From Dimorphilus gyrociliatus (lineage: Eukaryota; Animalia; Annelida): 64,000 nt of DNA. The notes under the pieces were generated by a model that made no database searches, was not told the origin of the DNA, and worked only from the letters and a program-made list of their open reading frames with translations. A program made the position numbers and the translations under genes. The stretch spans positions 1 to 64,000 of the forward strand of contig CAJFCJ010000029.1 in assembly GCA_904063045.1 (NCBI GenBank), in the 5' to 3' direction. Positions 3,104 to 55,388 of the stretch are shown piece by piece; the first letter of the stretch is position 1; the number at the start of each line of letters is the position of its first letter.

Positions 3104-3293
3104 TTAACTCTTTTTTGTTTGTTGTTTTTCATTTTCTACTTGGACAAAAAAGACTAAAATTTAGGTTTTTTTTATAAATTCATTACTTTTAATAAAAATA
3201 TAATTCACTCATCAAATATATCTAATATATCAAATATAAACTAAGACATTATATAGTAAACTTGTTTAAGTTTCTCATCAATTCTTGGAATGA

Positions 3294-5913: not shown

Positions 5914-5944
<31 letters not shown>

Positions 5945-6473: not shown

Positions 6474-6934
6474 TTTGTCTTAAATTGATGATCTCAAATT
6501 GTACATATACAAAAATGTCTCTCAAATACTCAACTACGCCCTTTTATTCAATATTTTTTGCACACGATACTAGAAAATTTCATGTTTACAAATACAATAC
6601 ACCATCTGGCTGTTAAGTTAGACATTAAATTATTTCACACGACACTACAGTTATTATTAATAAGAAGAGCCATGTTCACAATCCTATATTTGTTAAATTT
6701 ACAACGAAAAACGTTTCCATTTCTAGGCGAATAGGAAATAGGCAGGAGATTCAAGATAAAGAGAAACATGGAAATTTTAAATGTCATTGCATTTGTTCTA
6801 AATTCTCAAAAAAAAATATTCTTTCAAGTTATATAGTCAATTAATATTAAACTGTTCGAGGCCTTCGCTTGAATCATATGAACGTTTAATTTTTTTACTA
6901 TTTTACTCTATACTGCACACTTTGATTCGAACAA

Positions 6935-21500: not shown

Positions 21501-24500
21501 TCAATTAACAGTCAAACTGGAGAAATTCGACTGAGGAATAGTTTGGACTACGAAAGACTAAGGACCATCCCTGTACGAATAACAGCTACGGACGGGAATA
21601 TAAATGCAGTAAGTTTTATATAAACAAAACTCATCTCTTTCTCATTCTCTGTACATTAAATATTTTATATAACGTAATTCAATCAGCGTTAATCATCGTT
21701 TTTTTATAATTCTAATCAATTTTTTTCCCCCATTTTTTTTTTACTAGACCGCAACAACAACCCTAGTTGTTACCGTGACTGATATTAATGATAATTCACC
21801 TGAGCTAGGAGAGACTGTGAAAGAGCTGTTTGTTGATGAGGGTAAGAGTAATATTATTGTCGACGGTAGAATTTGGGGTAATGACGAAGATGAAGGAGCA
21901 AATGGACAAGTTCGCTACAGAATTGAAAATAACGAATACTTCCGTATTGATGAAAACACAGGAAATATGTATACAAAAACGGCGTTAGATTATGAAACTA
22001 AAAAAATCCATAAGGTCCCTGTCATCCTCATTGATAGAGGAACACCACCAAGATCGTCTGTAGTTTATATAACCGTTAATGTCAACGATCTTGAAGATGA
22101 AATACCAATATTTGATAAGACTAGTTATCAAGCCACTGTAAATGAAAACGATGATAATGCATATGTTGTTACTGTTTTGGTTTGTATTGATATTTTTTTA
22201 CCAAGTTTTCTCAATTATTTATAATAATTTCACTTAACTAAAGGCAAGGGACGCCGATACAAATAAATCGGTAACTTATAAATTCAGCCGTAATGAAAAC
22301 AACCTTTTCAAGATAAATCAAACAAATGGAGAAATTCGAACAGCTGTCAACCTAGATTATGAATTATCACGTCGGCATACAGTTATAGTTTCAACTGAGG
22401 AAGCTGGAAATAACAGAAATTATCTATATTCAGCAACCGTCACTATAAGTGTTTTGGTAAATAATAGGCCTAATAATAATTGATTCTTCGATTGAAGCTT
22501 CAAAGAGATCGATTATACAAATAATTTTTTTTCTTTAAAAGGATCGAAACGATAACGTACCGAAATTTGAAAAGGACTTATATCGAGTGGAGAAAGGCGT
22601 AAAAGAAAATATTGCGGTTGGCTCAGACCTTACTAGAGTTAGAGCTACAGATGATGATCCGTCAGGGGTACAACATTTTTTCCCAGCTTTTTTCCAATAT
22701 ATAGGCAATTTCCTTTAACGTGACTATTTGTTTTTGTTTTTGTTAGACATTTAATAGCAGGATACGTTATAAGCTTAAATCTTCCGTACCACCTTCCGGG
22801 AATGGATTATTTTTGGTTCATCCGGATCAGGGAGTAGTAATTGTTAGAAGACCATTGAGCGATGATAAAGATGACGTTTCGAGTTACGAGGTTTGTTTTC
22901 ATTGGCTATTTACTATATTATTAAATCAAATACTTGAAGTAAGTGATTAATTGTAATTTGTATATTAACAAATAGTTAACCGTTGAGGCGATAGATTTGG
23001 GTAATCCTCCCCTTTCAAGCACCACTAAAGTTGTTGTACCAATACTTAGGAATTTAAATGCTCCAAAGTTTACGGAAACGAGTATATCAAGAACAATTCC
23101 GTCTACCTTCCCAGTGAATTCTGAAGTTGCGCGATTAATTGTTAGCGATGCCGATACAATTGATCCATTCAACTCAATTCGACTTAGAGTTATTGGCGAT
23201 GGTAAAGCTCAAGGATATTTTAAAATATCACCTAGTGGATCCCTGAGTCTAAGTCGTAATTTAAAAGATGACTCAGACAGAAGATATACAGTAAGAATTA
23301 GAGCAACTGACGGAATGGGTAAAGAAAATGAGAGAGACGCTGTTGTTAGAATTACTGTTGAAAGAAATTTAAATGCTCCCGTATTTAATCCAAAAAAATA
23401 CGATAAAACAGTTCAAGATAACCAGCCATTGGGAGATACAATTCTCACTCTTACTGCAACGGACGCTGACAAATATGCACCTCACAAGACTATTTCTTTT
23501 CGAATTATGCCTAACAATGCTGGTACACACCAATATTTTCAAGTTGATGATTCAGGAGAAGTATACCTAAAGAGGTCGCTAGCACTTGATACCGCTTTAA
23601 GAACTCAATATAAATTTAACATAAAAGCTTTTGATGAAGGCGAGCCTGAAAGAAAGGAATCTGTTGAAGAAGCAGAAGTCACTATTCAAGTTCTTCGTAA
23701 TGAAAATTCTCCAATCTTCTTTAATTCATCATACTCGGCCTTTATAAGAGAAAATGAAATAAACGTTGGTAGATTGATAACAACAGTACTGGCTAATGAT
23801 AAAGATACAGTTAATGATTTCAAAACCATTAGTTATGATATTATTGGTGATGATAAGGCTTCGAGCTTTTTCAATATTCATAAAACTAATGGAGAAATTC
23901 GAATTGCAACTAATTTTGTCAACGATCCAGCGGAGTTGCATAGAATTCGTGTCTTAGCAAGCGACAAGGGGAATCCACCTAGAACTGCAAGCGTATTCGT
24001 TAATGTTGAAATCGATAGAAATTTAAAATCTCCACAATGGAATGGTGGTATCAATAGAAACTATAAAATTTTAGAAACTGTTCCCTCAGGAACAATAGTG
24101 GGAGACGTTCAAGCTCGAGATTCTGATAAATTCCCACCAAATAATGTTGTTTCATATTATTTAATTGGAGATGAAAAGGCAACTGAATACTTTAACGTCA
24201 ATGACAAAACGGGTAGAATTTTTGTTCAAAAAGATCTCACAGCCGATTCAAGCTCAAGTTTATCTTATAGTTTAGTATTAATTGCTAGAGATTCCGGTAA
24301 AGTGCCACGATCCAGCTCGAATTTAACAATAACAGTACAAGTCATTAGAAATTTGAATGCCCCTGTATTTACTTCCGGTGATTTTACAGTACAGCCAATT
24401 AGATCTCAAACTTCTGTTGGATCTAGAATTTACACTGCATCCGTATCGGATAGCGATGATAAAAATCAATTTGGCTCCGTAACATATAGTATTATCGGAG

Positions 24501-27500
24501 ATAGTTTAGCTAAAAATTTCTTCGAGATCAATTCAAAATCAGGAGAAGTCAGAGTAAGAAATGCACTAGATAGCGATCCATCAACAAAATATAATCTTGT
24601 AATTCTGGTTGAAGATAATGGAGATCCTCCAAAATCTGATCAAATGATTCTGACAGTACCAGTAAACAGAAATCAGAATAAACCTAGATTTTTTACAAAT
24701 AATAAGAACATTGTCATTTTGGAAACGCAAGAATTAGGAGCTATAATTGCTGAAATGCCTGCTAGTGATAATGATAAATTCCAACCATTCAATACTATCA
24801 CCTACAGACTTAAGCCTGAAGGAGTAAATGCTGAATACTTTAATGTTGATTCCTTCACTGGAAATGTCTCAGTTAGAACTAGTTTAAACTCTCATTCAAG
24901 AGATGTTTATAGGGTAAGATTTTTTTTCCTATTGTACTTAAATCTTGTCCAAGTTCTAAAAGCGTGTATGTAATATTTTAAATAGCTGACCATTGAAGCA
25001 TGGGACGGTGGAAATCCGCCACAAAAATCCGATCAAGATGGAAGAGTTACAGTCAACGTGCGACGAAATAAAAATACACCGAGGTTCACCGATTCGAATT
25101 ACGGCGTCAAAATTGATAGAAACATTGAAGTTGGCTCAAGAGTAATCAGAGTTCAGGCAACAGATTCAGACACCACACAGCCTTTTAATACTATTACATA
25201 TTCAATTACCGGTGATGATGTGGCAAGCGATTATTTCGAAATTGATAATCTAGGAGTTATAACGCTAAAAGCGTCTATAAACCTTAGAGAAGAGACAGTT
25301 TATAGAGTAAATTATACCATAATCTATATTTAAAAGCATTAACAATAATTTAATTATTAATTTTATTGTAGATAAGAGTTATTGCAAGCGATAAAGGCCT
25401 TCCATCAAAGAGTGCAATTACTATTGTTACTGTTAGTGTTAATAGGAATCTTGAAGTGCCTATATTCACAAATCCAACAACACGTATTGCTAACACAACT
25501 ATTCTCGAGACACATGATTACAAATCAGTTATTTTTACTTTCTCTGGTACTGATAGTGATGTCACCGTAAGTCTTTGCCTAACAGCATATGTATTCCTCT
25601 TTCTATTTATATTTATTTATTAAAGGCGCCATATAATACTGTAAATTTTCGAATTGTTGGAAATTCGGATGATACTCAATTCTTCTTAGTCGATTTTAAT
25701 TCTGGAAAACTGCAACTCAGAAGGTCTCTATTACAAGATTCTAATTCCAAAACAGTATACAATGTTAGTATATAGAGTATTTGTAAATTCAATTAATGAT
25801 TTATTGTACAATAATTTGTGTTGCTTTCTTTTTAGTTGGATATTGAAGCTGTTGATGGAGGAAATCCACCAAAATCATCTATCGATCGAATTAGGTATAA
25901 GGTTTTTGTTAAAAGAAATACCGGAGCTCCAACTTTCTCTCAACCTTCTTATTCTTTTTCTGTTGACGAGACAACTGGATCTGGCAATAAAATTGGAATA
26001 GTTTCTGCTACCGATTCAGACTCCGATTTTAATAAAGTAACATATGAAATTTTCCGAGGGGATGTAGCTTCTAACTTCTTTTCTATTAATCCCAATACTG
26101 GTGAAATATCTATAAGAAGATCTTTACAAGACGATTCCGCTTTAACCTATGAAGTAATGATTAAATAATTTGAATGAATTTTTTATTATAGTATTATTTT
26201 ATACTTCTGCAATAGATAAGAGTTATAGCATCCGATGATGGTGTTCCACCACTGTCTGAGACAAAGCTAGTAAAAATATCAGTAAATAGGAATCTCAATT
26301 GTCCTACTTGGAATGATAAAAATATCAATACGAACATTATGGAAACTGATCCTGTTACAAAATTAATTGCCAGAGTAAGAGCAAGTGATAGAGACTCGAA
26401 GGTATGCGAAACTGTTGCCACTGTGTAACAAAGGAACAATAAAACTAATTATTTCTTTTATTTCAGAGTCCACACAAAGATATTAGATATAAAGTAATTG
26501 GTAATTCTGAAGCTAGTAAATATTTTACCGTTAATGCTATTTCTGGTCAAGTCTATCAAAAAGTTCCCGTATTGAATGATCCAAACAAAGCCGAAGTATA
26601 TAAAGTAAGGATAACTTTTACACACAGATATACTGTATATATTTAATACAATAGAATCAATAACCTTTAATCTTTTCACTCAGATTGAACTATCTGCTTC
26701 GGATTTAGGAGAACCTATTCCTTGCACTGCTGCTAGTAATAGCAGCGTTACAGTTAGGGTCTATAGAAATTTAAATGCACCCGTTTTCACTAATAATGGA
26801 ACATATAGCAAAAAGATTAGAGAAAATTCAAATATAAATGATTTTGTCACGTCAGCAAGAGCGACAGATAAAGATTCCAGATCGCCTTTTAGAGATATTG
26901 AATATAAAATTGTTGGTGAAGGTCCATCTATTGGACTATTTAAAATTGGACTAACAGATGGAAATATACGAATTCGTAATTTCCTAACAACCGATCCATC
27001 TCAAACTTATCGAGTATTTATAACTATCAATATTTTAAATTATCGAATAATTAATGCTATTTAATCACTACAGATTATTGTAGTAGCCGAAGATAAAGGT
27101 ACTCCAAGGAGATCGGCCACAGGAACAGTTGATGTAGCAGTTGAAAGAAATTTAAATCAGCCATCATTTACTGAGACCAACGTTCGTTATGAGATCGTTG
27201 AAACAACGATTGTTGGAACTGAACTAGTTCAACTAAGAGCAACTGATGATGATACTTTTGTAAGTAAATGTAAAATTATTATTCGAATTGTTATAAATTA
27301 TGTTTTATCGTCTTAAAAAAAGGCTCCCCACAACGAAATAAGATACAGTATTTCGCCAAACCAATTCCAAGCAGAAGAGTATTTCAGCGTTGATCCAATT
27401 TCTGGGAAAATCTTTTTAAGGAAATCTGTTCAACAGCTGAACAATTTAGAAGTAACGGTTCGTATTTTATAAAATCAATGTTTAATCATTGTTATACCAC

Positions 27501-30500
27501 TTCGCTCTAAAGTACCCTTGAAAAACAACAACAACTGCACTCCTCATATTTACATTAAACGTTGTTGATGTGTCTTATTGTTCATTTAATTGTTGAATAT
27601 TCATATCGTAGTCAATCTCTTGCACATTTTTAATTACTTAATTTTTTAATTGCTCGCAGGATATCGAGGTTTGATTTTAATATCATAAGCAAACTTTAGC
27701 TAAAAAACCCACGTTGTAAGCGAACGTCGCTAAGAATGCTTTATAAAACTTATAACATATTTTAGCTAGAAAATATCTTATCCTTAGTTTTAATACAAAT
27801 CCTAAAACGAAGCACTGTTCAATAAAAATATTTACGCTTACTAGCCAATGCTATTGCAGGTGTATATTTTGCAGAACGTTGTCATTTTCTCTCTCACACA
27901 TATAGCATGTCTTTTGGGAAGATAGAAAGAAGACAATATTATTTCATTTTTATATTATTGTTGTTTTTAATAAATTATATATATATTTTTTTTTTTAAAA
28001 AAAAAGAATCTTTTTTCTATAATTAAAGTTTTTAATAATATTTCGTTTTCTTTTAGTTCCGCTGTGAAATTACTGATCTTGGCATCCCGCCAAAAAAAGG
28101 TAGAAATGCGGCTACTGTAACTATTGGAATTACGAGAAATAAGTATTCACCGAAATTCACTAATATCCCGAAGACTATAACTGTCGATGAAACGGAAAAA
28201 GTAAATCAATTGATTATTTAAAAATCAATAATTCTATGTATAGAAATTACAAATTAGACGCTAATTTATTCTATTTGTAAATTATAGCAAGGAATTGTCG
28301 TTTATACCGTTAAAGCTGAAGATAGAGATACTAAAATACCATATAATTTTATGACATTTTCTTTAATTGGTGACGATACTGCTGATTCTTTCTTTAAAAT
28401 AAATGAAAATAGTGGTTCTATATCAATTAGAAATGATTTGGTAAATGCACCTGGTCAAACAGTAACTTACAGAGTAAATATTTATCATTTATAAGGTTTT
28501 TTTTTTAATTTTAACTTCAAACTGCAAAATTTTAATCCTTTTAGCTTCGAATCAGAGTAGAAGATGGGGGAAGTCCAGCTAGATTTGATATACAAATATT
28601 GACAGTACAAGTCAATCGTAATCTTAATTCACCAATTTTCTCTGAAACTCGAAAAGTATATAAAGTTAAGGAAACTCTCAGAATTGGTACAACTATCGGA
28701 TCAGTTTCTGCTAGAGATGCTGATACAAAGAATCCTCACAATAGAATTAGCTATTCTACCAATAACAACTTTTTTGATGTAGAAGAGAGCAATGGTAGAA
28801 TATTCTTAAAACGCCTCTTGCTGGATCAAGGAAGCGATGCAATGACTGTTGGTATTTGGGTTTTCTAAACTATTTTTGTTGTTAACTTTCAAATCCTGCT
28901 TCAGATTACAATAATCGCTACGGATAATGGTATTCCGAATCGTCGAACTTCTCCTGAACCAGCTCTCGTAACAGTCAATATAACAAGAAATAAATTACCA
29001 CCAGTTTTCCAATCTTCCACGTATAAGATGAAAATTAATCAAGCACATTCGGGAAGAATAATCTTGGTTCAAGCAACTGATCTTGATACAGAGGTATAAC
29101 TATTTAACGATTCATAAATTTCCTCAAAAATCTGTTATTAATAAATCTTATCCTGATTTTTCAGAGCCCATTTAGAGATATCAAATACAGTATTATTGGT
29201 GATGACAATGCCAATAATTACTTTTCTATAAATGAAGTATCTGGAGAAATAACTCCGAAACAAAGTTTAAAAGACCATGACAGAAAATCTTATAAAATTC
29301 GAGTAGAAGCTAGAGATGGTGGCACTCCACCACGAACTGCTATTACTGTAGCCGAAATTGATGTGGAAAGGAATTTAAATGCACCTACATTTAATCCAAA
29401 GAGCGCGATTATCTCTATACTAGAAACCATTAATTTGGGTCAGACTATTTATACAGCTTCTGCAACTGATCAGGATAAAAATGTTTGTATTAGTATTATT
29501 ATCATGAGAAAATCTGAAGTTTTCTATCATAATTTATCCATAGGCTCCGGATAATCAAATTCAATATGCCATCTCTAATGAAAACGATAATTTTAACCTA
29601 TTCAAAATTCAAGAAGGTAGTGGTGAAATCTACATTGCTAAAGATTTAAGAACCAATAGCGCCGATTCTTACTCGGTATTTCATAATAAAAACCAATTAA
29701 ACAATCGTTAACAACATTAATTTCACAGGTGAAAATTAGCGCAACAGACAAAGGAACAAATCCTAAAAAGGCAGCTGAAGATTTTATACTTGAAGTACGA
29801 GTATCTAGAAATAAAAATGAACCAACTTTTACTGATGGAGCTGTTCAATCACAAACTATATCGGAAAATGTTGAAGACGGATATATCGTTAAAAAATTTA
29901 ATGTTAAAGATCTGGATGACAAAGAACCATTCAACGTTGTCACAACTGGAGCCATTGGAGATGGTAATGCAGAAACCTTCTTTGAAGTTAAACCTAAAGG
30001 GGAAGTTAGCATTAAATCCGCATCCAGTCTAGCATCTGATAAAGCTCCATCATACCAAGTAAGATACGATGATTTCTTTTAATGAAAGTATCCTCACTAA
30101 AATAATATTCCAATTTCTTTTAGTTGAGAGTTTTAGCATCAGATGGAGGAACGCCGCCTAAAACTTCAACAGCTGTACTTACTATCAACGTCCAAAGAAA
30201 TTTATACGAACCGAAATTTTCCAATGAAAACAATATAGCTGTTTCATTGAAAGATACAGTAGCTCCAGGAACAGAAGTTACCGTTTTAACAGCTACAGAT
30301 GATGATAATGATGTTAGAATTTCTTTTAATAATAAGCAAACTATCTTCTAAACAAAGATTTTACAATTTTTTTTATATAGGCTCCATACAATACAATAAC
30401 TTTCACTATTATTGGAGATGGAAATTCTACAGACTTTTTCTACATCCATCCAGATACAGGCCGTATTACAACATCTAAGGATTTTTTTACGACGACAAAA

Positions 30501-33500
30501 AACTTTTTCAGAGTTTGTTATAGATTCTCTATTGTTGTTTAGATTATTAAACACGTCTATTCCGTTATAGATTCGAGTTAAAGCAACAGATAGAGCTCCC
30601 GTACCAAAATCTAGTATTACTTACGTAGAAGTCAGTATTATAAGAAATCAAGGTACACTACGATTCAGTAGTAACACTTTAACAACAGAAATTCAAGAAA
30701 CAAGAGCAATCGATCAAACGGTAAAAGAAATTTATCTTTAATCTTTAAATGTGCGTTACATTTTCTTTAATGTATTTGTAGATATATCTTGCTGTAGCAA
30801 GTCCATCTGATAATGTAAAATATCGAATAATTGGTACTCTATTATCTCAAGAATATTTCAAAATTGGACAAAGTGATGGAAAAGTACAAATTAAGAAAAG
30901 TCTTAAAGATGATCAAACAGCTGCCCCGTATTATTTGGTAATTGATTTTCAATTTTTTCTCTATTGTTAATCTATTAGGCTAATCTTTTTTCCTTGTCTC
31001 TAGATTCATATTGAAGCGGAAAGAGAGTTTGAAGTTACCAAGCAAATCGCTAAAACTACTTTGAATGTTACTGTTATAAGAAACTTAAATCAGCCTAAAT
31101 TCTCCTCAAGACTGTTTCAGAGAAGAGAGTTGGATGAAAAGACTCCTAAGGGAACAATTTTATTGGAATTATCGGCCGTTGATAATGACAAAGTAATGAT
31201 GAAAATATTTATTGCTATTCTTCTAATTATATGTTTTTCATGTTAATAGGATGTTTTACTTTACTCGGTTGCTGAAGGAGAAGATGCGTCTTTCTTCTAT
31301 TTGCACCCGTCAACTGGAGAAATATCTCTGATTAAATCCCTTCTTACCGATACAGCAACTACCTATGAGGTTGGATAGTATTTTCAATTATCAATATCTA
31401 TTTATTTATCATATTTGCATGGTAAAATTTTCAGTTTGACGTTATTGTCTCTGATCAAAGAATTCCACCAAAAACTGATAGAGCCACAGTAAGAGTTTTT
31501 ATTAAGAGAGATGTGAAGGATCCATATTTTGAGGGAATTCCCTATATTACTGAAGTAGAAGAAACGGCTCCACTAAATCATCTTATCATCCAACTAAAAG
31601 GAAAGGATGATGATAGAGAAGGGCCATTAGTTTATGGAATTGATGGTTTTGATCCTGCTCCATTTTATTTTCGTGTTGATTCAAGTTCAGGTCAGGTTAT
31701 GGTGAAAAGAAACTTAAAATTGAGTTTAGATTTTACTTTTACTGTAAGTATACTGCTGCAAAATAGATCAATATCATCATTTAATCCCATTTTCTTACCT
31801 ATAGTTATCAGTTTTTGTTTATGACAATGCAAATCCTGATAAAAAAGCTAAAGCTAATGTTACAATTACGGTTCTTCGTAATAAGAATCAGCCCGTATTT
31901 CAAAAAGCTAAATACGAGATGTCTGTATTGGAGAATAGACGAGTTGGATCCACCCTAGTCAATGTACAGGCTGTTGATCAAGATGGTGATGAAGTACGAT
32001 ATAGGATAATAGGCGAGAGCAGTCAGTTCCTATTCTTAAACGAAAGAAATGGGGCCATCAGCCTTGCTAAACCTTTGAGTGATGCAGTTGAAGATCAAAT
32101 TAGAATAAAAATTGAAGCTTACGATAACGGTTATCCGGTTCGAAGCAGTTCAACAAATGCTGATGTTATAATAAATATTAACAAGAATAGACATTCACCA
32201 GAATTTATTGAAGATCAATATTCAACAACTATAACAGAGAAGAGGGGAATTAATAGCGATATCTTGAGACTTCAAGCTACTGATAAGGATAATCAGGTAA
32301 GGATTAAACTTGCTTGCAAAATTATGCTCATTAGGTAATAAACAATTCGCAGAGTCCCTTCAACACCATTAAATATTTTATGATCGGTGATGAAAGTGGT
32401 CCTACCTTCTTCAAAATTAGCGAGGAAACCGGAACTATATCAATTAAATCGAACCTTAGAAACGACGATAGAGAAGTTTATTATGTAGATAATTGTGAAA
32501 TACAAAAGCTACTGTAATATTTAACAATTTTTAATGATATTTTTTAGCTAAGAATAGAAGCAAGGGACGGAGGATCTCCTGCAAAAATAGCTACTCGTGT
32601 AGTAGTTGTAACAGTGGAGAGAAACCTTGAAATACCTCGATGGAATAAGAATACATATATTGAAAATATACTAGAAACTTTCCCTGTCGGTAATACTGTT
32701 ACAAGATTACAAGCAAGGGATGACGATGATCGTGCTCCTTATAATCAATTGGAATATAGTTTAACCGAAAATGTTGACTCTCGTATATCGGAGTTTTTTG
32801 GTGTTGAACAGTACACAGGAGCTCTTTTCCTTAGGAAATCTCTAATTTTAAGCGATCTAAAACAATTCGGGGTAAATTTAGATATGGATGAATATTAATA
32901 CTTTGTACTTACATTTATATTTTTTTTAGCCTTTCGACGTTGTGCTTAAAGATAGAGCACCTAATCCTAAAACGGCTACGTCCATGGCTAAGGTCACTAT
33001 CAACATTGGACGAAATGAATTTTCTCCATCTTTTGGTCAGAGTACATTCAACAAAACGATTGATAGAAATCAAAGAAATGGCGAATTATTGACTGTAACA
33101 GCAAGGGATTTAGACACAAGCTATGGACCAGTTACCTACGAACTAATTGGTGATGGTGAAGCTACAGCTTTCTTTAGAATAGATGCCAACACTGGCAGTA
33201 TTTCACTCACGAGAAGTGTCAACAATGAAGCTGCAACAGAATATAGACTAAGGATAGTTGCAAAAGATAGAGGGACTCCTCCAAAAACAGATACAGCTAT
33301 TGTCATTGTGGAAGTTCGACGAAATTTACATAGACCAACCTTTTCACCAAATACTTACGATTTAAGAATTGTTGAGAATTGGCCAGTCTACCAGCCGACC
33401 TTCTTAGTCGTAAAATGTAGAGACAGTGATGTTGCGCCTCCGTATAACACTTTGAAATACTCAATTACATCTCCAGAAGAAGCTAAAAATTATTTTGAGT

Positions 33501-45500: not shown

Positions 45501-48500
45501 GCGCAAATCCGAGGAGAAGAGCACAAACAACGGCAACTGTTCAAGTCAGACGAAATGTCTTCCCACCCCGTTTTGATCAGAATCAGTATAATGTAGCAGC
45601 AAACGAAAGCCTGCCTCTTGGACAAGTAATACTTAAAGTTGAAGCCGATGATAGAGATAAGGTAAGAAGAAAAACGAAAAATAATAAATTTAATAAATTA
45701 AAATATTTCAATAGGATCAATTGGAATATTCAATAATTGGTAATGAGAAAGCTTTGGAATATTTCCATATTAACCCAAGAACAGGAGAGATTTCACTAAA
45801 TAAACCCCTAAATAAAGATAATGATGAGAATTATCTTGTAAGTCTTTTAAAATTTAAAAAGTAGAGCTTTCTGTCTAATGATAAATGAATATTTTTAGAT
45901 ACAAGTAGAAGTTAAAGATGGTGGAAAACCCGAGCAAAAAGCAATTACGAATGTAAGAGTAAAAGTTAAAAGAAATAAGAATATGCCAACATTCGATGCG
46001 GAGATTAATGCAAATGTTCCAGTTAATACTAAAGTTGGTGCGGTAATATCATCTGTATCTGTATCGGATCCAGATTTATCTGGCAACCTCATTTACGAAA
46101 TTTCGGGTGATGATACAGCAAAATTGTTTTTCTCTATTAATAGTAATGGTGAAATTATACTCAAAAAACCATTAACCGATGATAATTTAAGAAATTTACA
46201 ATATAAGGTAACACTTTGATAATTTTAACTGATTAATGAATGATAATACATGTTAAATCATTGAAATTTAATTAGCTTAAAGTATCAGTCTACGATTCAC
46301 ATTTCCCGAGAGATGTTATCTCTACAACTGGAACTATTGATGTCAATCGTAATGCCAATCCGCCACAGTTCGATTCTAGCAATTATAATTTTGAAATAGC
46401 TGAAGATACTGATATCGGAGCATCTGTATTTAAAGTATCAGCAAACGATCCTGACGGAGTAAGTTTTTATATTACTATATCTACAGTATCAAATTACTCT
46501 TTTCGTTTCATTTTGAAAATAGGGAAATGTTACTTTTATGATAAATGATGAGACTGTTTATCAAAAGTACTTTTACATTGATCCACATTCTGGTGTTATT
46601 AAATTGAGGAATTCGATCCTAAAAACCCCTGAGAAAAATATGGTTATTGTTGTTGAAGCAACTGATTCTGGAAAGCCGATTCAAGTGGTTAAAGCTAGAA
46701 TTAATATTTTTATCAAAAGGGATGAATATCCTCCAGAATTTGTTAATCTTCCAAATACAACAAAAATTACTGAAAATCAAGAGATTAATGGAGTATTTTT
46801 TATAGCCAAAGCCAGTGATCCTGATTCTATTACTCAAGAAATGAACTATGAAATTGTCGGCTATCCACCAGCCGATCAATATTTCCAAATAAATAAGGAA
46901 AATGGTGAAATTAGTGTTCAGAAGAGCTTGAAAGAAGATCGCGGATTAGATTATATACTAAGAATTGGATCTTACGCAACTGTAAAACCTGCACAGAAAG
47001 TTTTCCAAGATTTGACAATTACTGTACAAAGAAATGTTTACAAACCGCAGTTTACGCAAACTCAATACGAGAAATCGGTAAAATCAACTCAAGCGCTTGG
47101 TGATGTAATTCTTACTGTAAATGCTACTGATCGGGATCAGGATGTTTTAACGTATACCCTAGAAACTGAATCTTGTAAAGAATACTTCTTTATAGACTTC
47201 AGAGATGGAAACTTGAGATTAAGTAAACTATTACCTGCTGATAATTCCATAAAGGAATTCGATTGCATAATCAAAGCCAATGATGGCGGCTATCCTACGC
47301 CTCAAACAACTACTGTTCCTGTAAAAATCACTGTTCAACCGTCCAACTTAGTTCCCGTAATTGATCCAGTTCAGAGCATTGAAATTGAAGAATCAGTACC
47401 AGAAAATACTATAATCCAAAGTGTTAAAGCAACGTTGCCTTCAGTTAGCGTGAGTTGAAAAAATATAATATCTAAACTATTTATATACTCTTATCATTAA
47501 TGGGTTTTTGTATAAAACATCTTCATTTTATCTTATAGGGAGAATTGAAATATGAAATAGTAGGCGATTATCCATCACCGGACTTCTTTGGTATAAACTC
47601 ACAAGGAGAAATAACAATAACAAGAGATTTAAGAAAGGATAGTCTACAATTGAACGCCTATAGAGTAATTATTAAAATAATTCGTAGAATCTTTATGTGA
47701 TTTCAACCCATTTTTATGTTATTAGATAAAAATTGAAGTTTACGATAGTGCTACTCCAAATGCAAGAGCAAAAACAGAATTCTCAGCAACTGTTAAACGT
47801 AATGTTAATAAACCATCCTTCGAGAAGGATACCTATCAAATATCAATTAATGATACATGGAAGCAAGGAGATCTTGTTGCTGAAATAAAAGCAACAGATA
47901 AAGATAACGAGACTATTACATATTCCATTGTTGGTGATGATAAATCGATCATATACTTTCATATCGATCAAAATACTGGAAAGTTATCGGTTCGAAGACC
48001 ACTATCTGAAGACAATACCCAAGTGTATGAAATAACTATTCAAGCCAAAGATAAAAGAGGTCATTTGAGCTTTGCTAAAGTTACTGTTCAAGTTCCACGA
48101 GATCTCTACCTCCCAGTATTTGAGGCTGACAATGATCCAACTGTAATTGTCGAAGGAGTAAAACCAGGACTAGTTGTTAAAACTGTAAGAGCGAATGATC
48201 AAGACCTAAAACAAAAGATAAAATACGGAATGGATGGCTATTTCCCATCAGACATTTTCTTTGAAGTAGATGAAAATACTGGAGAAATAAGGGTAAAGAA
48301 AAGTCTAAAAGATGATAATTTAGGAAACCAAAAATATATCGTAAGTTAAATTTGCTACTTAGAATGAGAGATATCTAATCTTTATCATTTTCAGCTGCAT
48401 ATGTACGCCTATGACACTCAATTTGAGGATAGAAGAGGATATGCTAATTTTACAATTACTATTAGAAGAAATCCTAACGCACCTCAATTCAAGGAAGATG

Positions 48501-51500
48501 TTTATGAAAAAACTATGCCATTAACCACTCCTATTGGAGAAGAGATCGTTCAAATAGAAGCCACTGATGGAGATAATGTACAAATCTATTATCCCTTTAA
48601 CATTCTCCTTATAGTATTCTGTATTATTTATTTTTCACTCCAGGATAGGATTATCTACTCAATTGAAACAGAACAAGGATCAACAATTGATAGTCTTTTC
48701 TTCATTAACCCCGATACTGGTCGAATAATATTAAGAAAATTATTAGTTGGAGTAGCAGAAAAATCATTTGAAGTTTGCCTTTAATTTATAGATATACTCT
48801 CTTAAATGACCAAACATAAAAACATATTTATTACTTTCCCACAGTTTTTAGTGAAGGCTGAAGATAGCAGAGGAAGTTCATCATCAGTTGTCGTTAGATT
48901 AACAATCGGAGATAAAAATGAACCACCAGCGTTTGATAAAGAAATTAACAAATTTACTTTATCGGAGAATAGTCCAGTTAATGAAAATGTTATACAGATT
49001 GCAGCCACCGATCCTGGTTCTTATACTAATTTACTTAGCTTGTAGCTATTTTTAAATAATCTATTAATCTCTATTATAGATTTGTTCGGACCAATGGTCT
49101 ACGAACTTAAAGGAGTTAGACCAGGTTCAGATTATTTCGGCATTAGGACAATAAACAATATTGGTCATATTTACTTATTGCAAACTATCGAAAATGATTG
49201 GACCCAAATATATACGGTATGTTTAAATAAGTTGAATTATTTATAGCATAACAGTAACTTTAATAATAATTTGATAGTTACGTATTGTGGCCTATGATCA
49301 ACAATACAATTACCTAAAAGCTGAGACGTTGGTTGAAATAACAGTTGAAAGAAATCTTAATAAACCTGTGTTCAAATCTTCCAATATCCGAGTATCTGTT
49401 AATGAACACGATCCTCTTGGAAAAAATATTACTCAAGTTTCCGCCACTGATGCTGATGTTCCAGTAGGATTATTTTGTAAATTATATAATCACATATCTT
49501 AATCTTTAACTGTATTTCTCAAGGGTCCAAAATCCCAGATTTCCTACGATATTATTGGTGACCATCCAGCAGACAGCTTATTTGCTATACATCCAAAAAT
49601 TGGTTACATTTTCATAAAAGAACCATTAACCGAAAAGCCAGAAAAATTATACATTATTAGTGTTGTTGCAAGAGATAATGGCATACCTCCTCAATCATCA
49701 GTAGCAACTATCAGAGTAACAGTTGAAAGAAACGATCTTAGCCCTGTTTTCCCTATTAGTTCAGACTATTCTAGAACAATTGGTTTCCGATGGGCAATAG
49801 GATCAAGAATAGTTCGTCTTGAAGCAACAGACGGAGACGAAGAGGTTTGACAATTAATAACAAATTGGAACCCAACTTACTTTTTCATTAAACTTTTAGG
49901 GACCAAATAGTATTGTGTCTTATAAAATAGCAGAAGCAAATAACGAAACAATTGAATATTTCATGGTTGAAGAAGAAACCGGATGGATAAGTCTGAGAAA
50001 AGACTTATCAACAAGCGCAACAAACGAATTCAAAGTAAACTTATACTGCAATATTAAAAATATTCGTTCTAAATTAGCCATCTTCTTTTACAAACTAGAT
50101 GAGCGTCATCGCATATGATCACGGTAAACCATCGAAAGAAAGTCAAAAGAAAGAACTAACTATAACAGTATCGAGAAATTCCACAACACCTATTTTCAAA
50201 CCTACTGACTACGAGGCTGAAGTTGGTGAGAGTCAAGCTGTTAACTCAGAGATAAAGATCAACCCACCACTCCATGTTATTGATAGCGATAACGTAATTA
50301 TTAATTAAAAATAAGGGGGAAAATAGACCAGAATGATTAATTTTGTTTCTTTTTCATCGTATAGTGCGGTCTCCTATATTCAATAATTGGACTTGACAAA
50401 GCTCAAAATTTATTTAAAATCAATCCAGGTACAGGAAAGATAACTATTGGTAAAGATTTGAGATTGGATCACGAACCATCTTATACTGTAATTTTTTCCC
50501 TTTCTTTTGTTTGTACACGAAAAGATATACACGTAATTTATTATTTTTATGTAGATAAAAGTAGCTGTTCAGGACGAATGCGACAAACAAAATACGGCAA
50601 TTGCTCAGATTAAAGTAAACGTGAATAGAAATGAAAATTCACCAATATTTAGCAACGAACCATACGTAAAGAGTGTGGGAGAAGATATATCTATCGGTGA
50701 AGAGATAATAACTATAACAGCAACAGATGAAGATGAAGGAAAGGCAGGAGAAATTAGATATTCTATTGTTGAAGATGACTCCTCAGCAAATATTACTGAT
50801 CTATTCTTCCTTAATCCTCAAACTGGAGTTGTCACAATCATCAAGAGTTTACTCGATGATCCTAACAAGAGACAAGTCTATAGAATAACGGTTCAGGCTG
50901 CTGATCAGAGTTTAGTTCAGAAATCAACAACTGCAATAGTTAGAATCAACGTCAGAAGAAACTTATATGCACCAGTTTTTGACAAACCTTCATACAATGC
51001 TGAAATAAGTGAAAATGCCAAAGTTAACGACATTGTTTTGAATGTTAAAGCCACTGATTCTGATGACGCAACTGTAAGTAATGAGTATATTATAATGATA
51101 ATATTAAATCAAAACCGGAATATTTTTATAGGGTGAAAATTTAACATACGAGCTAATTGGAGGAAATGACGCTGGTATAGGATTATTCCAAATAGGTAGA
51201 AGATCGGGTGTTCTCTCTGTTAAAAATCCTTTATCGACAAGTTCCCAAGAGTATTTCAATGTATGATGATTTATTTATTATTGATATACTTTCGCATATT
51301 AACTAGAAAATTTAATTTTTTATCAGTTTATGGTTGAGGTGAAGGACGGAGGCTCTCCTGAAAGATCGGCCAGAGCTCCTATTTCTATAAGAGTTAAAAG
51401 AAATGAATTTCAACCAATTTTTGAAAGTCCAACCTACACAAAAGTTGTTAATGAATTTATAAGAGTTGGAGCTAATGTTCTCACTGTAAAAGCTGTAGAC

Positions 51501-54500
51501 AAGGACGATAGTTCAACAAGATCTGGAACTATTGAATATTTCTTGGAAGACATAGAAAATTCAGGAGAGAACGTAATTCAATATTTCTCTATTTGGAGAT
51601 CGGAAGGAAGAATAGTTATTGCCAAAAATCTTCATGAGGATGTATCTAAGCAGAGAACATACATGTTCAATGTTATCGCTAGAGATCAAGGAATACCATC
51701 TAAGAGCAATCGCACAAAAGTCGAGATAACTGTAAGACGCAATGACAACAAACCGATTTTCGAAAAGAGTCCATACAAGTGGTCTGCTAATGAATTAGAT
51801 CCTATCGGTACAGTCGTAGGGAAAGTTAGAGCCGTAGACGCCGACATTGAATTTCAACCTGACGTAAGTGTTTATATAACTAACACTTTCTGGGTGATAA
51901 CAATTTTATCTATCGAAAGTGAAAGTAATCACTAGGTGTCGTTACTGACACCTATTTAAATGCTGGTATGTTAGAACGTCACTAACAGTAACATTTCTCC
52001 ATCAGGCACCGAACTCGAAAGTTACCTATAGATTATCGGCATTTTCTGGAGGATTGGAATACTTTGCTCTAAATTCAAAAAATGGTGAAATCTCCGTTGC
52101 TAAATCTCTATTCGCAGATCCCGATGCCGTATTACAATATATGGTAAAACATATGCGCTAATCTATTTAACACAATTTATAATATTAGCCAATAATCCAT
52201 TAGCTTAAAGTCTTTGCTGAAGATGGCGGAAACCCAATGCAAACTGATCAGGTGGATGTTCTCATCAACGTTACCAGACCAACAACATCAGTTGTTGGTA
52301 AATTGGGATTTGCTAAATCGTTATATCTGTAAGTAGCGTAAGCGTTTAAATCTTTCCACTAGTTCTAATATCTAATTATCCAAACAGAAAAGAAGTAATG
52401 GAAGATATGACACAAAACAGAGAAGTTGAAAGATTACAGGTTGTTAATCTTAAAACAAATCAAACTGCTGAATGCCTTATTCAATCCGGAAATGACGAAA
52501 GTATAACAAAAGATATTCCAATGATACATCAATTTAAATGATAAAAACATATATACTAATGCATTCTTTCTTCCCACATTCTTCTTTTCTAGATAAATTT
52601 TCAATAGAGATAAACAAGAATCAAACCTATTGTACCATTAAACTAGATGGAGAGCTGGATAGAGAAAAGAAACAGAAATATATCCTATCAGTCATCATTA
52701 AAAATAAAAATAAAAATACCGGTACCAATCGAAAAAAGCGAGATGGTGTGTCATAACTTTTCCTTTCTATAACATTTTAGATATAATATACACCTATACG
52801 TATAATCATTGTTTAACCCACACAAGTAACTAGTCACGTTGTTCGTCATTCTATTCAGGAACTTGTCTCCCCTTTTTTATCTGATTAGATAAACTTAAAT
52901 GTTTATTTAATGCATATCTATATATGTTGTTTAAATGTATGTATATAGTAGTTATATTTATTAGTATTACCGAATAGTATTCTTAATTGCTATATAACAA
53001 AAACATCCTTTTTTATTGTTATATAGCAATATGCACATAGATCACCATATAGCGTTACTGTAGATTTAACATATGTCTTTTTGGCACATAAAAATTGTTA
53101 CTTAATTGACGAATTGAATATTGATTATATACTTTTAATTTGCAGTTGTAGCCACTGGTTTTAATAGGATAAGAGTAATAATTGAAGTGCTTGATGTCAA
53201 CGATTCACCACCTGAATTTATAACACCGGATTACAGTCCTTTGAACTTGAACAACGTCTACGTTACAGCTGTTCCTAGGGAAATATCAGCACCTAGTAAT
53301 ATAATACAGATAAAGACTATCGACAGAGATTTGGGCGTTAATAAAGAAGTGACTTACTCAATATTAAGTAACGACGTACCTTTTAAAATCGACACAAACG
53401 ATGGACAAATATCGAATCTAAAGGAATTTACGAAAGAGGATAGTTTCTTTGAATTTTCAGTTAGTGCGTCTAATTCAAAATCGGATGTTAAGTTATTATC
53501 AACTGCTAAGACTTATGTAAGTTTAATAGATTGATTAAATTAAATTAATTGACTAATTAATTTCTATTTGTCTTTAATTTAGATAAATCTAATTGAAGAA
53601 AAGCATAGAATAGTCCTTGTATGGGAAAATCAAGCTGTTGAAGATGTTAGTCAGAGATTGAATGATACTAAAATGTAAGTTTCTTATTGAATATGTATAA
53701 ATAGTGAAACATTAAATTGTTCAATCTTCTAGAGCTCTTCAGAGATTATCCAATAAGATAATCGTAATTGAAAAACTAACACCAAGAACTTATTTTGCTG
53801 GCGGTGATGAGAAAGTTGAAAAAACTGAGTAAGATCTCCCATTGATTATTCAATTAAAAAGAGTAATTATTTATTCTTATTTACAGTACGGATATGTACT
53901 TTGTCGCCATATCGCCCACAACTTTTAAAATCTTGGAAACCGAAAGTGATGAAGTAAGCCAGTAAGTAACAAATGCTAAGATTTTGTAGAGTTTGTTTTT
54001 AAATATCCTTTGTCATCTATTACACCAAGCGTTATATGAAACGAAAACAGAGCAAAACCAAAACCAACAAGTGTCATACCGAGAGCTACTATAATAGATA
54101 ATAATAAATATATAGTTATTCTTCTTTTCTTCTCTTCTGCTCGTTGCATAGCCTCCAGAACCCTCGTTCTTCTTACTCTTTCAACTTTTATTGGAGTTGC
54201 TAGGGCGTCCCATACAAAATCATCTTCTTTAGATACTAACTCAGTTTGAGATTTTAGAGAAAAGGTCGCTCTCCACCTTCGCATTATTCATTTAGTAATA
54301 ATTATGAATTACGAATTATATAATAATTTGAATTTTTAAAACAGATCTTTCACATCATCGGTGGCGATTACTAATATAAAGAAAGAGATGGAAACTCTTG
54401 GACTAAATATTCAAAGTGTGAGAACTGCCTATCCAGTTGTCGGTGCAATTACGGGAAAAACGTACGAAAGCTATGACGAAGCTCCTTGGATTGCCCTAAT

Positions 54501-55388
54501 AGTTCTTGCAGCCCTTATTATAGTCTTTTCAATAATTGGAATGTTTGTAATATGTTTCACCTACGGAAGATATAAACACTCTCTTAGAGATAAAAATGCT
54601 GCCTATATTCGAACTTTACCTGCTGGACATGTAAATGGCTCTACAACCGAACTTATGTACGACAATTCGTCGGATTTTCTTAGGGAGTACGAAACTCAGA
54701 GCTTAGCCGTTTACGTTCCGGCCGACGAGCCAGTACAAGAACAAGGAGAAATTAACATGAACTTTTCTGTGGCGGACGAAGCAACAGCTCGCACACTACC
54801 TCGAAGTACCTACAGTGCCGATGCATCAACAAGATCCCACAATGGTGGTGTATTCTCGGCTACTAATCCAATATATCAAAGGTATAGAGATTCATAAAAT
54901 AACATTATAGAAGTTCATAAACAAACATTTATATTTTCTCTAACAGTTCTCAACAATTTACCTCTATTCATGAACGACTCAGCAGTGGAAACGACGCTAC
55001 AACATCAAGAGCGGTCGGATATGGAGGTGATTTTACAACATCAAGAACGGTCAGAGGTGGAAGCGACTTTGCAGCATCAAGAACGGCCGGAGCTGGAAGC
55101 GACTTTTCAACATCAAGAGCGGTCAAAGGTGGAAGCGACTTTGCAACATCAAGAACAATAGGAGGTGGAAGCGATTTTGCAACGTCCAGAAAAATTGAAG
55201 GTGGAAGCGATGTAGTATCATCAGGAGTGATCGGAGGCGAAAGTACTAGCGATACAAGACACGAATCAAGATTAGTAACAAAAACATCAATGAAATCATA
55301 CGGTCATAGAGAGAATACAAACCGATTCTCATCAGGCAGTCAGACTGCTGCCGCTTACGAAGTTAACGACGATCCAACCGTCTTTTAA
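18524..55388 (+). CDS. Giant cadherin-related type I membrane protein (~85 EC repeats; PCDH15/Cad99C/CDHR-like termini)
   Basis: Signal peptide MFSLRISVILLLLAVPSIAQE at 18524. Continuous in-frame GT-AG exon chain through EC repeats, a MAD12/SEA-like juxtamembrane region (about 53582-54480), a TM helix ALIVLAALIIVFSIIGMFVICF (about 54490-54560) and a cytoplasmic tail ending ...DDPTVF* (TAA 55386-55388). All cadherin ORFs in the track from 19978 to 54897 are exons of this one gene. Confidence 0.93.
19344..19358 (+). other. Candidate 15-nt microexon (SSVRK) in cadherin EC1
   Basis: ACTAAC branch-like site, pyrimidine tract, CAG|TCATCTGTCCGCAAG|GTACC; phase 0-0 inside an unusually long ~690-nt intron region. 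Confidence 0.65.
27660..27668 (+). other. Candidate 9-nt microexon (DIE) in about EC21
   Basis: TTTTTTAATTGCTCGCAG|GATATCGAG|GTTTGA; phase 0-0 within a ~600-nt intron, with TGC just upstream of the acceptor. Confidence 0.55.
40557..40571 (+). other. Candidate 15-nt microexon (DNTTL) after the DxD motif of about EC54
   Basis: TTTTAG|GATAATACGACATTG|GTACGT; phase 0-0, flanked by enlarged introns (40401-40556 and 40572-40907). Confidence 0.6.
53976..54284 (-). CDS. Nested antisense 102-aa single-pass membrane protein inside a cadherin intron
   Basis: ATG-to-TAG ORF fills most of intron 53962-54344. It has a charged N-terminus, a KKRR stretch and a ~30-residue hydrophobic segment (ITIYLLLSIIVALGMTLVGFGFALFSFHITLGVI). 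Confidence 0.55.
   Translation of the reverse strand: MRRWRATFSLKSQTELVSKEDDFVWDALATPIKVERVRRTRVLEAMQRAEEKKRRITIYLLLSIIVALGMTLVGFGFALFSFHITLGVIDDKGYLKTNSTKS
54981..55232 (+). repeat. Seven 36-nt coding tandem repeats (12-aa xGGSDFATSRTI consensus) in the cadherin cytoplasmic tail
   Basis: In the spliced frame: SSGNDATTSRAV GYGGDFTTSRTV RGGSDFAASRTA GAGSDFSTSRAV KGGSDFATSRTI GGGSDFATSRKI EGGSDVVSSGVI. Confidence 0.9.

What the first reader, a model, noticed from the sequence alone, without database searches (positions are those of the whole stretch)
22975..52300. About 75 consecutive linkers replace the Ca2+-binding DxNDN with R-[N/D]-x-x
Seen: EC1-8 and EC84 end in canonical or near-canonical linkers (DVNDN, DSDDL, DINDN, DLEDE, DRNDN, DVNDS) and many carry LDRE/LDYE. 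From about 23050 (ILRNLNAPKF) to about 52280 almost every repeat ends in RNLN, RNKN, RNEF, RDEY or similar, one residue shorter, and has lost DRE. Most keep DxD and the A-x-D-G-G-x-P aspartate. Known: Ca sites 1 and 2 depend on xE, DRE and the linker aspartates, while site 3 uses the linker Asn, DxD and the top Asp. Inference: these linkers hold at most one Ca2+, and the near-invariant Arg may replace the lost ions by salt-bridging to the retained xE. That would be a distinct, largely calcium-independent junction repeated about 75 times, predicting an ectodomain with different elasticity from classical cadherins.
Basis: partly seen in the sequence, partly recalled or inferred. Interest (0 to 1): 0.88.

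Follow-up and report, generated by a model that had tools for sequence, protein, structure and literature searches.

The report
Arginine-type linkers in a giant cadherin
One expressed gene encodes a cadherin of about 85 repeats in which 75 consecutive junctions swap two of the three usual calcium sites for a conserved arginine, and the same junction type fills giant cadherins of molluscs, a brachiopod and a nemertean, so it is an undescribed but widespread variant of the cadherin joint.

Summary
My spliced model has 82 cadherin (EC) repeats between 19969 and 52329, and about 85 in the whole gene (18524-55385, + strand). RNA contigs confirm all 15 listed introns between 24600 and 30500.

From EC9 to EC83 the linker reads V-x-R-N-x-x-x-P-x-F. 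Arg is present in 69 of the 74 complete linkers, and N or D follows it in 66. Shuffled sequence gives 0.16 matches.

- **Site 3 is kept.** Its ligands (linker Asn, next-domain DxD, top Asp) are as conserved as in canonical cadherins (96-98%), and they are lost together in a few junctions.
- **Sites 1 and 2 are dismantled.** The first Asp of DRE and both linker Asps are gone. The xEx Glu (80%) and an Asp in place of the DRE Glu (62-66%) remain.
- **The linker is one residue shorter.**

I therefore read it as a one-calcium junction, not a calcium-independent one. The Arg-to-acid salt bridge could not be tested.

AlphaFold predicts a confident but non-canonical two-domain geometry: rmsd 5-8 Å to solved EC pairs, against 1.5-3 Å for a canonical control.

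PCDH15 EC5-6 is a solved single example of a site-3-only linker. This scan had noted the same gene before under other headings.

The parts
18524..55385 (+). Whole giant cadherin gene: signal peptide, about 85 EC repeats, transmembrane helix, cytoplasmic tail
   Evidence: ORF pieces and splice model. A 26,955-nt spliced RNA contig covers it.
18524..18588 (+). First coding exon with the signal peptide (MFSLRISVILLLLAVPSIAQ)
   Evidence: donor at 18588
19811..22559 (+). Head, from the EC1-2 linker to EC8. Linkers are canonical or near-canonical (DVNDN at 19841-19855, DSDDL, DVNDN, DINDN, DLEDE, DRNDN), with LDYE motifs. Collinear with PCDH15 EC2-5.
   Evidence: phmmer: exon residues 12-426 align to PCDH15 residues 153-572 in one stretch, E 3.6e-33.
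22560..52297 (+). Array of 75 EC repeats (true EC9-EC83) that end in the Arg-type linker V-x-R-[N/D]-x-x-x-P-x-F
23048..23071 (+). First Arg-type linker, RNLNAPKF (end of EC9)
23378..24061 (+). EC10-EC11 pair (with the start of EC12) modelled with AlphaFold2; the linker is R107-N108
   Evidence: pLDDT 92.4, pTM 0.78; rmsd 4.9-8.5 Å to solved EC pairs
24600..30500 (+). Stretch where RNA contigs confirm the predicted GT..AG introns, including the 599-nt intron 27457-28056
   Evidence: All 15 listed joints equal my junctions.
37600..48940 (+). Zone (EC46-EC75) where every second linker deviates: R-D / R-E / R-S / T-D, often followed by P-P. This is a two-EC super-repeat.
   Evidence: Linker class string
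32171..32206 (+). Exception: EC31 linker ININKNRHSPEF, with Lys in place of Arg
37230..37275 (+). Exception (approximate coordinates): EC45 linker VKREKGELKF, with no Asn and no Pro. The following EC has no DxD (SASPG).
47327..47362 (+). Exception: EC71 linker ITVQPSNLVPVI, with no Arg and no Asn in register. The following EC has no DxD.
48899..48934 (+). Exception: EC75 linker LTIGDKNEPPAF, with no Arg. The same EC also lacks the xEx Glu and the Asp at the DRE position.
52270..52297 (+). Last linker of the array, VTRPTTSVV. Arg is kept and Asn is lost. The following EC84 has NLK in place of DxD.
52363..53207 (+). EC84, of canonical type: LDRE at 52655-52666 and linker LDVNDS at 53190-53207
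53208..53531 (+). EC85, the membrane-proximal cadherin repeat
   Evidence: Pfam Cadherin, E 5.1e-09
54487..54558 (+). Transmembrane helix (WIALIVLAALIIVFSIIGMFVICF)
54559..55385 (+). Cytoplasmic tail with GGSDFxxSR repeats, ending in TVF. No Pfam family found.

Best explanation
The array consists of true cadherin repeats joined by a remodelled 'RN' junction.

- **The half of the junction that belongs to the next domain is canonical.** Counted from the Pro, the linker Asn residues sit where N102 and N104 sit in classical cadherins. DxD and the top Asp of the next EC are kept. Ca site 3 is therefore retained (inferred).
- **The half that belongs to the preceding domain is rebuilt.** The pair D100-x101 is collapsed into a single Arg, which makes the linker one residue shorter. 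D103 and the first Asp of DRE are lost. The xEx Glu stays, and the Glu of DRE becomes Asp.
- **Role of the Arg (inferred).** The most likely reading is that the Arg guanidinium occupies the space of Ca sites 1 and 2 and neutralises the two or three remaining carboxylates.

This would give a junction that needs one Ca2+ rather than three and has its own fixed inter-domain angle or twist. Repeated 75 times in one expressed transcript, it would build a filament several hundred nm long, with shape and elasticity unlike a classical cadherin rod.

Shown: the motif statistics, the expression and splicing, the conservation in other phyla, and the predicted non-canonical geometry. Inferred: the Ca stoichiometry, the Arg contacts and the mechanics.
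For: **Motif counts in this protein** are. They agree with counts over 254 RN and 2048 canonical junctions from 163 giant cadherins:

| Position | RN | Canonical |
|---|---|---|
| xEx acid | 80% | 99% |
| first DRE Asp | 5% | 89% |
| third DRE position | D 62%, E 6% | E 91% |
| next DxD (two Asp) | 98%, 96% | 99%, 99% |
| top Asp | 98% | 92% |

- **Cross-phylum agreement.** The window's frequencies equal those of the other 33 proteins.
- **Co-loss.** Loss of the linker Asn and loss of the next DxD go together: 3 of 7 against 2 of 68, p = 0.005.
- **Linker length.** Strand G ends right before Arg107 in the RN model and before Asp98 in the control. The Pro follows at +5 and +6 respectively.
- **Geometry.** RN pair model: pLDDT 92.4, pTM 0.78, yet TM 0.44-0.60 and rmsd 4.9-8.5 Å to solved EC pairs. 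Canonical control made the same way: TM 0.74-0.89, rmsd 1.5-3.3 Å for nearly all of the top 50, on the same entries.
- **Precedent.** PCDH15 EC5-6 has a changed XEX, no DRE and linker PPNNQ, keeps DXD and XDX, and binds one Ca at site 3 (PMC7547225).
- **Expression.** One spliced RNA contig of 26,955 nt covers the gene.
- **Selection rather than recent duplication.** The repeats are only 24-33% identical to each other, so the conserved Arg reflects selection.
Against: - No coordinates could be read, so no Arg-carboxylate distance was measured.
- AlphaFold2 models no ions, and no solved structure has this linker type for it to have learned from. The predicted geometry may be wrong.
- The xEx Glu and the Asp at the DRE position show no mutual dependence among RN repeats (odds ratio 1.2, p = 0.59).
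- 20% of repeats lack the Glu and 32% lack the Asp, so a fixed Arg-Glu-Asp triad is not universal.
- Too few linkers lack Arg (5 of 74) to test coupling with the acids.
- The three remaining carboxylates (xEx Glu, Asp at the DRE position, second Asp of DxD) could still hold a weak second Ca2+.
Confidence: 0.55

Rival explanations
1. Two-calcium junction. Sites 2 and 3 are both occupied, as in PCDH15 EC3-4 or mouse PCDH24 EC2-3. The Arg lies outside the site, for example packing on the next domain.
For: Three carboxylates that normally touch site 2 remain: the xEx Glu, the acid at the third DRE position and the second Asp of DxD. Two-Ca linkers are documented (PMC7547225; PMC8691648).
Against: Both linker Asps, which the documented two-Ca linkers keep (DGDDL, DxPDL), are absent here. 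A conserved cation right at that spot would repel Ca2+. The Glu-to-Asp change at the DRE position is not expected for a retained site.
Confidence: 0.15
2. Fully calcium-free rigid junction. The Asn, DxD and top Asp are kept only as a hydrogen-bond network, and the Arg holds the two domains together.
For: Ca-free linkers exist: PCDH15 EC9-10, LI-cadherin EC2-3 and DN-cadherin. [quoted passage not shown]
Against: As I know them, and not checked here, the solved Ca-free linkers lack the DxD and XDX motifs. Here those motifs are kept at 96-98%, as high as in canonical junctions, and are lost together with the linker Asn. The RN model fits the bent Ca-free PCDH15 EC9-10 even worse (rmsd 8.5 Å).
Confidence: 0.12
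3. The Arg serves something other than the junction itself. It could be a periodic contact for side-by-side (cis) packing of filaments, or for an anionic partner such as sulfated glycans. The loss of sites 1 and 2 would then be a separate event.
For: The residue before the Arg is Lys or Arg in 21 of 74 repeats, which gives a periodic basic patch. Giant cadherins often work as bundles or dimers (PCDH15, PMC7547225).
Against: The Arg appears exactly where the first linker Asp was and only together with the loss of the site 1/2 ligands. RN and canonical linkers almost never mix within one protein. A surface contact residue would rarely be 95% invariant across repeats that are 25-30% identical.
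Confidence: 0.1
4. Not a functional feature: a recently amplified or decaying repeat array whose uniform linkers only reflect recent duplication.
Against: The repeats here are only 24-33% identical. There is no stop in 8717 codons. The gene is spliced and transcribed in two independent runs. An orthologue at 69% identity keeps every linker. The same motif frequencies occur in molluscs, a brachiopod and a nemertean.
Confidence: 0.02

Closest known systems
PCDH15 EC5-6 linker (partial Ca2+-free linker, Ca only at site 3; PMC7547225)
   Same: The XEX is changed, DRE is lost, and the linker has lost its Asps but kept Asn (PPNNQ). DXD and XDX of the next repeat are kept, and one Ca2+ is seen at site 3. 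The head of this protein is also collinear with PCDH15 EC2-5.
   Different: It is a single junction in an 11-EC protein and has no Arg. It is seen in several orientations, so it is flexible. Here the type is repeated 75 times with an invariant Arg, an Asp kept at the DRE position and a confident single predicted geometry.
Ca2+-free linkers (DN-cadherin EC2-3, PCDH15 EC9-10, LI-cadherin EC2-3; Jin et al. 2012, cited through PMC8325961)
   Same: These are non-canonical junctions that change the shape of long cadherins.
   Different: As I know them, and not checked here, they lack all Ca ligands including DxD and XDX, and they are bent or flexible. The RN junction keeps the whole site-3 set. The RN model fits PCDH15 EC9-10 poorly (8.5 Å).
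Canonical three-Ca2+ cadherin junction (XEX, DXD, DRE, XDX, DXNDN)
   Same: The EC fold is the same (Pfam PF00028). XEX, DXD and XDX are kept. The Asn residues are in register with N102 and N104 when counted from the Pro.
   Different: The first DRE Asp and both linker Asps are lost. The linker is one residue shorter, with Arg at the first linker position. The predicted two-domain geometry is 5-8 Å rmsd away, against 1.5-3 Å for the control.
Spiralian proteins auto-named 'protocadherin Fat 4-like / Fat 1-like / cadherin-99C-like': Haliotis rubra XP_046564129, Patella vulgata XP_050391949, Lingula anatina XP_013411494, Tubulanus polymorphus XP_074647699, a Gigantopelta aegis protein (P0015) and others
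   Same: They carry the same RN linkers with the same motif frequencies. The Gigantopelta protein also starts with a run of canonically linked ECs before the RN repeats (its similarity to the PCDH15/Cad99C head was not tested).
   Different: The database entries are shorter or partial (at most 39 RN linkers in 3738 aa). Their names are automatic. None is characterised as far as I could find.

Membership tests
Cadherin superfamily (EC repeat, Pfam PF00028) | Tandem repeats of about 110 aa that match the Cadherin profile | tested here: met
   E 2.9e-74 and 3.2e-61 on the long exons; 82 domains in the spliced core
Canonical three-Ca2+ junction | XEX Glu in the preceding EC | tested here: met
   Acid in 59 of 74 repeats here; 80% over 254 RN junctions
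Canonical three-Ca2+ junction | D-R/Y-E motif in the preceding EC | tested here: not met
   First Asp 5%; third position is Asp 62% and Glu 6%, against D 89% and E 91% in canonical junctions
Canonical three-Ca2+ junction | D-x-N-D-N linker | tested here: not met
   R-N-x-x-x with Asp at -6 in 1 of 74 and D/E at -3 in 15 of 74; one residue shorter
Canonical three-Ca2+ junction | DXD and XDX (top Asp) in the following EC | tested here: met
   D 71/74, D 71/74 and D 68/74; 98%, 96% and 98% in the wide set
Partial Ca2+-free, site-3-only junction (type PCDH15 EC5-6) | Site 1/2 ligands missing while the site 3 ligands (linker Asn, DXD, XDX) are kept | tested here: met
   definition from PMC7547225
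Partial Ca2+-free, site-3-only junction (type PCDH15 EC5-6) | Exactly one bound Ca2+ at site 3 | not testable with these tools
   Needs a structure or a titration; AlphaFold2 models no ions
Ca2+-free junction (Jin et al. 2012 class) | Absence of all Ca-binding motifs at the junction | tested here: not met
   DXD, XDX, linker Asn and XEX are all kept
PCDH15 / Cad99C family | N-terminal ECs collinear with PCDH15 | tested here: met
   Exon 19969-21249, residues 12-426, aligns to PCDH15 residues 153-572 in one stretch, E 3.6e-33
PCDH15 / Cad99C family | 11 ECs followed by the membrane-adjacent MAD12 domain | tested here: not met
   About 85 ECs. No family found in the short exons between EC85 and the membrane. 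The exons are small, so absence of MAD12 is not shown.
Fat / Fat-like cadherins (the automatic name of the relatives) | EGF and laminin-G domains between the ECs and the membrane | tested here: not met
   Pfam finds only Cadherin in the exons from 52204 to 55385

The most novel reading that the evidence does not exclude
The RN junction is an old, separately evolved way of joining cadherin repeats. A built-in arginine replaces two calcium ions and sets a fixed non-straight angle or twist, so that long RN arrays form regular helical, spring-like filaments that stay assembled at low calcium. If the window's organism is a non-bilaterian, as its isolation from named relatives hints, the junction predates the split from molluscs, brachiopods and nemerteans.
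Probability: 0.3. Interest if true: 0.8.

Novelty: new variant of a known kind. Interest (0 to 1): 0.62.

Why it matters
Cadherin mechanics are thought to be set junction by junction by how many Ca2+ ions each linker holds. Until now non-canonical linkers have been seen as isolated hinges within otherwise canonical chains.

Here a single non-canonical type, with a conserved Arg, makes up almost the whole ectodomain of an expressed protein of about 9,000 residues. It also defines a family found in at least three further phyla, where it is hidden under automatic 'Fat 4-like' names.

The family offers about 250 natural sequence variants of one junction for structural and single-molecule work. It also gives a direct test of whether a side chain can stand in for the Ca1/Ca2 pair, and a new building block for long extracellular filaments. 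The biological role of the filament is unknown.

Tried and rejected
1. **Which canonical residue the Arg replaces.** Sequence alignment could not decide. phmmer and MAFFT place the one-residue gap either before or after the Arg. I settled it with the strand ends in the two AlphaFold models.
2. **Three-EC alignment for folding (A1).** MAFFT staggered the overlapping paralogues into 691 columns, so I replaced it with non-overlapping pairs (A2).
3. **Coupling of the Arg to the acids.** Only 5 of 74 linkers lack Arg. The xEx Glu and the Asp at the DRE position are statistically independent (p = 0.59). Nothing can be concluded.
4. **A first RN class in the wide set** wrongly included canonical D-R-N-D-N linkers. 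This was corrected.
5. **Naming the organism.**
   - A neighbouring ankyrin gene has only masked or unnamed close relatives. Its next named hits, at 38-41% identity, are in a hemichordate and a sea star.
   - The orthologous contigs carry only run numbers.
   - A placozoan-like animal is my guess (GC 32%, short introns, transcripts in a coral metatranscriptome). It is not shown.
6. **Furin site or N-glycosylation as the role of R-N.** Rejected: there is no R-x-K/R-R pattern in general, and no N-x-S/T sequon in the consensus.
7. **Literature.** Four searches found no description of this linker type. Jin et al. 2012 is not held, so their survey of linker classes could not be checked.
8. **The search of earlier findings by words** gave nothing on linkers.


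Full report
**What is in the window.** The window is AT-rich (GC about 0.32) and eukaryotic. On the + strand, from about 18524 to 55385, dozens of short open frames follow one another. All the long ones match the Pfam Cadherin domain.

I built a repeat profile from the long exons and located all coding pieces. I then chose each GT..AG intron by combining the profile score with splice-site matrices. The core from 19969 to 52329 reads as 8717 codons without a stop, through 78 introns of median 63.5 nt, and holds 82 EC domains.

One EC and the signal peptide lie upstream (18524-19915). EC84, EC85, a transmembrane helix (54487-54558) and a tail ending at 55385 lie downstream.

**The gene is real and expressed.** A 26,955-nt contig of one public run, and shorter contigs of a coral metatranscriptome, skip exactly the introns I predicted between 24600 and 30500. 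All 15 listed joints agree, including the 599-nt intron.

**The observation.** The first eight linkers are DVNDN, DSDDL, QKNDF, DVNDN, FAINT, DINDN, DLEDE and DRNDN. Most of these repeats carry LDYE. From the linker at 23048 onward the pattern changes to V-x-R-N-x-x-x-P-x-F and stays so up to about 52270.

Of 74 complete linkers:
- 69 have Arg five residues before the Pro;
- 66 have N (59) or D (7) after the Arg;
- one has Lys, and one has the Arg with a still shorter linker.

The last linker (EC83) keeps the Arg but not the Asn. The pattern occurs 66 times, against 0.155 in shuffles. The Arg column carries 3.9 bits, which puts it among the five or so best-conserved positions of the repeat.

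Within the repeats:
- the xEx Glu is kept (E 52, D 7 of 74);
- DxD is kept (71 and 71);
- the top Asp of A-x-D-x-G-x-P is kept (68);
- the first Asp of DRE is gone;
- the Glu of DRE has become Asp (D 43, E 3), so the motif now reads L-x-x-D.

**Which residue the Arg replaces.** Sequence aligners disagree on where to put the one-residue gap. The two AlphaFold models settle it. Strand G ends at Leu106, just before Arg107, in the RN pair, and at Leu97, just before Asp98 (the first Asp of DxNDN), in the canonical control. The Pro follows at +5 and +6 respectively.

Counted from the Pro, the RN Asn (-4) and the frequent second Asn (-2) sit where N102 and N104 sit. In effect the pair D100-x101 has been collapsed into one Arg. 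The C-terminal half of the linker, which belongs to the next domain's site 3, is unchanged.

**Is it special to this genome? No.** The best database hits to a six-repeat exon are an unnamed orthologue at 69% identity and proteins of molluscs. Twelve of the top 120 hits carry RN linkers; eight of these are named, all molluscs, and four are unnamed. The other 108 are canonical.

An exhaustive profile search found further RN-dominated giant cadherins:
- Haliotis rubra (39 RN linkers, none canonical, in a partial 3738-aa entry);
- Patella vulgata;
- Potamilus streckersoni;
- the brachiopod Lingula anatina;
- the nemertean Tubulanus polymorphus.

All are named automatically as Fat 1-like or Fat 4-like, or left as hypothetical.

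I then scored 3330 junctions from 163 giant cadherins:

| Position | RN junctions (254, in 34 proteins) | Canonical junctions (2048, in 136 proteins) |
|---|---|---|
| xEx acid | 80% | 99% |
| first DRE Asp | 5% | 89% |
| third DRE position | D 62%, E 6% | E 91% |
| next DxD (two Asp) | 98%, 96% | 99%, 99% |
| top Asp | 98% | 92% |

The window's own figures and those of the other 33 proteins are nearly identical. RN and canonical linkers hardly ever mix inside one protein. The repeats are only 24-33% identical to one another, so this is selection and not recent copying.

**What it means for calcium.** By the established assignment of ligands, sites 1 and 2 use the XEX Glu, DRE and the linker Asps. 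Site 3 uses the linker Asn, DXD and the top Asp. The motif list is given in PMC7547225; the residue-level assignment is from my knowledge of classical cadherin structures.

Sites 1 and 2 have lost three of their ligands, while site 3 has lost none. Site 3 ligands are under the same constraint as in canonical cadherins.

Inside this protein they are also lost together. Of 7 junctions without N or D at -4, 3 are followed by an EC without DxD (after EC45, EC71 and EC83). Of 68 junctions with it, 2 are (Fisher p = 0.005). This is what a shared Ca site predicts.

The solved PCDH15 EC5-6 linker has the same logic (changed XEX, no DRE, PPNNQ, DXD and XDX kept) and binds one Ca2+ at site 3. I therefore read the RN junction as a one-calcium junction. 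'Largely calcium-independent' is not supported.

**The arginine.** It appears only together with the loss of the site 1/2 ligands, at the very position of the first linker Asp. It is replaced mostly by Lys when it is replaced at all. The acids that remain next to it are the XEX Glu, an Asp shortened from Glu at the DRE position, and the second Asp of DxD.

A guanidinium filling the Ca1/Ca2 space and pairing with these acids is the simplest reading. I could not test it for three reasons:
- the structure tool returns no coordinates;
- too few linkers lack Arg;
- the two acids vary independently of each other (p = 0.59).

A control pair with DxNDN linkers, modelled the same way from 22 sequences (pLDDT 95.4, pTM 0.81), superposes on the same entries at 1.5-3.3 Å with TM 0.74-0.89 for nearly all of the top 50.

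The predicted RN junction is thus neither the canonical straight one nor the L-shaped Ca-free one (PCDH15 EC9-10, 8.5 Å). I cannot say whether the difference is tilt or twist. A linker one residue shorter would be expected to change the twist.

**Family and novelty.** The head of the protein is collinear with PCDH15 EC2-5. One mollusc relative is named cadherin-99C-like and likewise starts with canonically linked ECs followed by RN repeats.

No EGF or laminin-G domain was found, so the 'Fat-like' names of the relatives are not supported for this protein.

In the second half of the array every other linker deviates (R-D, R-E, R-S or T-D, often with P-P). This is a two-EC super-repeat, also noted earlier by the scan.

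Partial Ca-free linkers are a known kind. An Arg-bearing, one-residue-shorter, site-3-only junction used as the near-exclusive joint of giant cadherins in several phyla is, as far as four literature searches show, not described. I class it as a new variant of a known kind.

**Limits.**
- The organism is not identified.
- Three junctions of my model (near 37330-37430, 46486-46570 and an in-frame intron-like piece near 48600) are uncertain. They do not affect the counts of linkers.
- The representative search lists only its best 150 proteins, so absence of RN arrays from other phyla is not shown.

Noticed in passing
window 37600-48940: From EC46 to EC75 every second linker departs from R-N (R-D, R-E, R-S or T-D), and the Pro is often doubled. 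This gives a two-EC super-repeat inside the array.
   Followed up: partly
window 19969-21620: The head is collinear with PCDH15 EC2-5. The linker that follows (ILFAINTIPRF, at about 21311-21360) lies where PCDH15 has its own site-3-only EC5-6 linker.
   Followed up: partly
window 27457-28056 and 40401-40907: Two introns of 599 and 507 nt stand out among introns of about 63 nt. RNA depth is zero inside the first. The second holds an AT-rich, Lys/Gln/Asn-rich open frame (40557-40760).
   Followed up: no
window 48593-48665: An in-frame stretch without a stop (VQIYYPFNILLIVFCIIYFSLQ) inside EC75 looks like an intron that my model kept. If it is retained in some transcripts it would insert a hydrophobic segment.
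   Followed up: no
window 54921-55385: The cytoplasmic tail carries about six degenerate copies of G-G-S-D-F-x-x-S-R and ends in T-V-F, a possible PDZ-type ending. No Pfam family was found.
   Followed up: no
window 24600-30500 (run X1): A coral metatranscriptome holds correctly spliced pieces of this transcript with about 14 single-letter differences. A close strain of the organism therefore lives in a coral-associated community.
   Followed up: no
window 61115-62317: A single-exon gene of 400 aa encodes an ankyrin-repeat protein. Its nearest named relatives are only 38-41% identical (hemichordate, sea star), then ctenophores. The organism seems far from any named proteome shown to me.
   Followed up: partly
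L001/L002 (SRR23372228, SRR23372229), 1-7803: Genomic contigs of a related species carry the orthologous gene (69% identity in the six-repeat exon), with a broadly similar layout of called cadherin pieces and every RN linker kept.
   Followed up: partly
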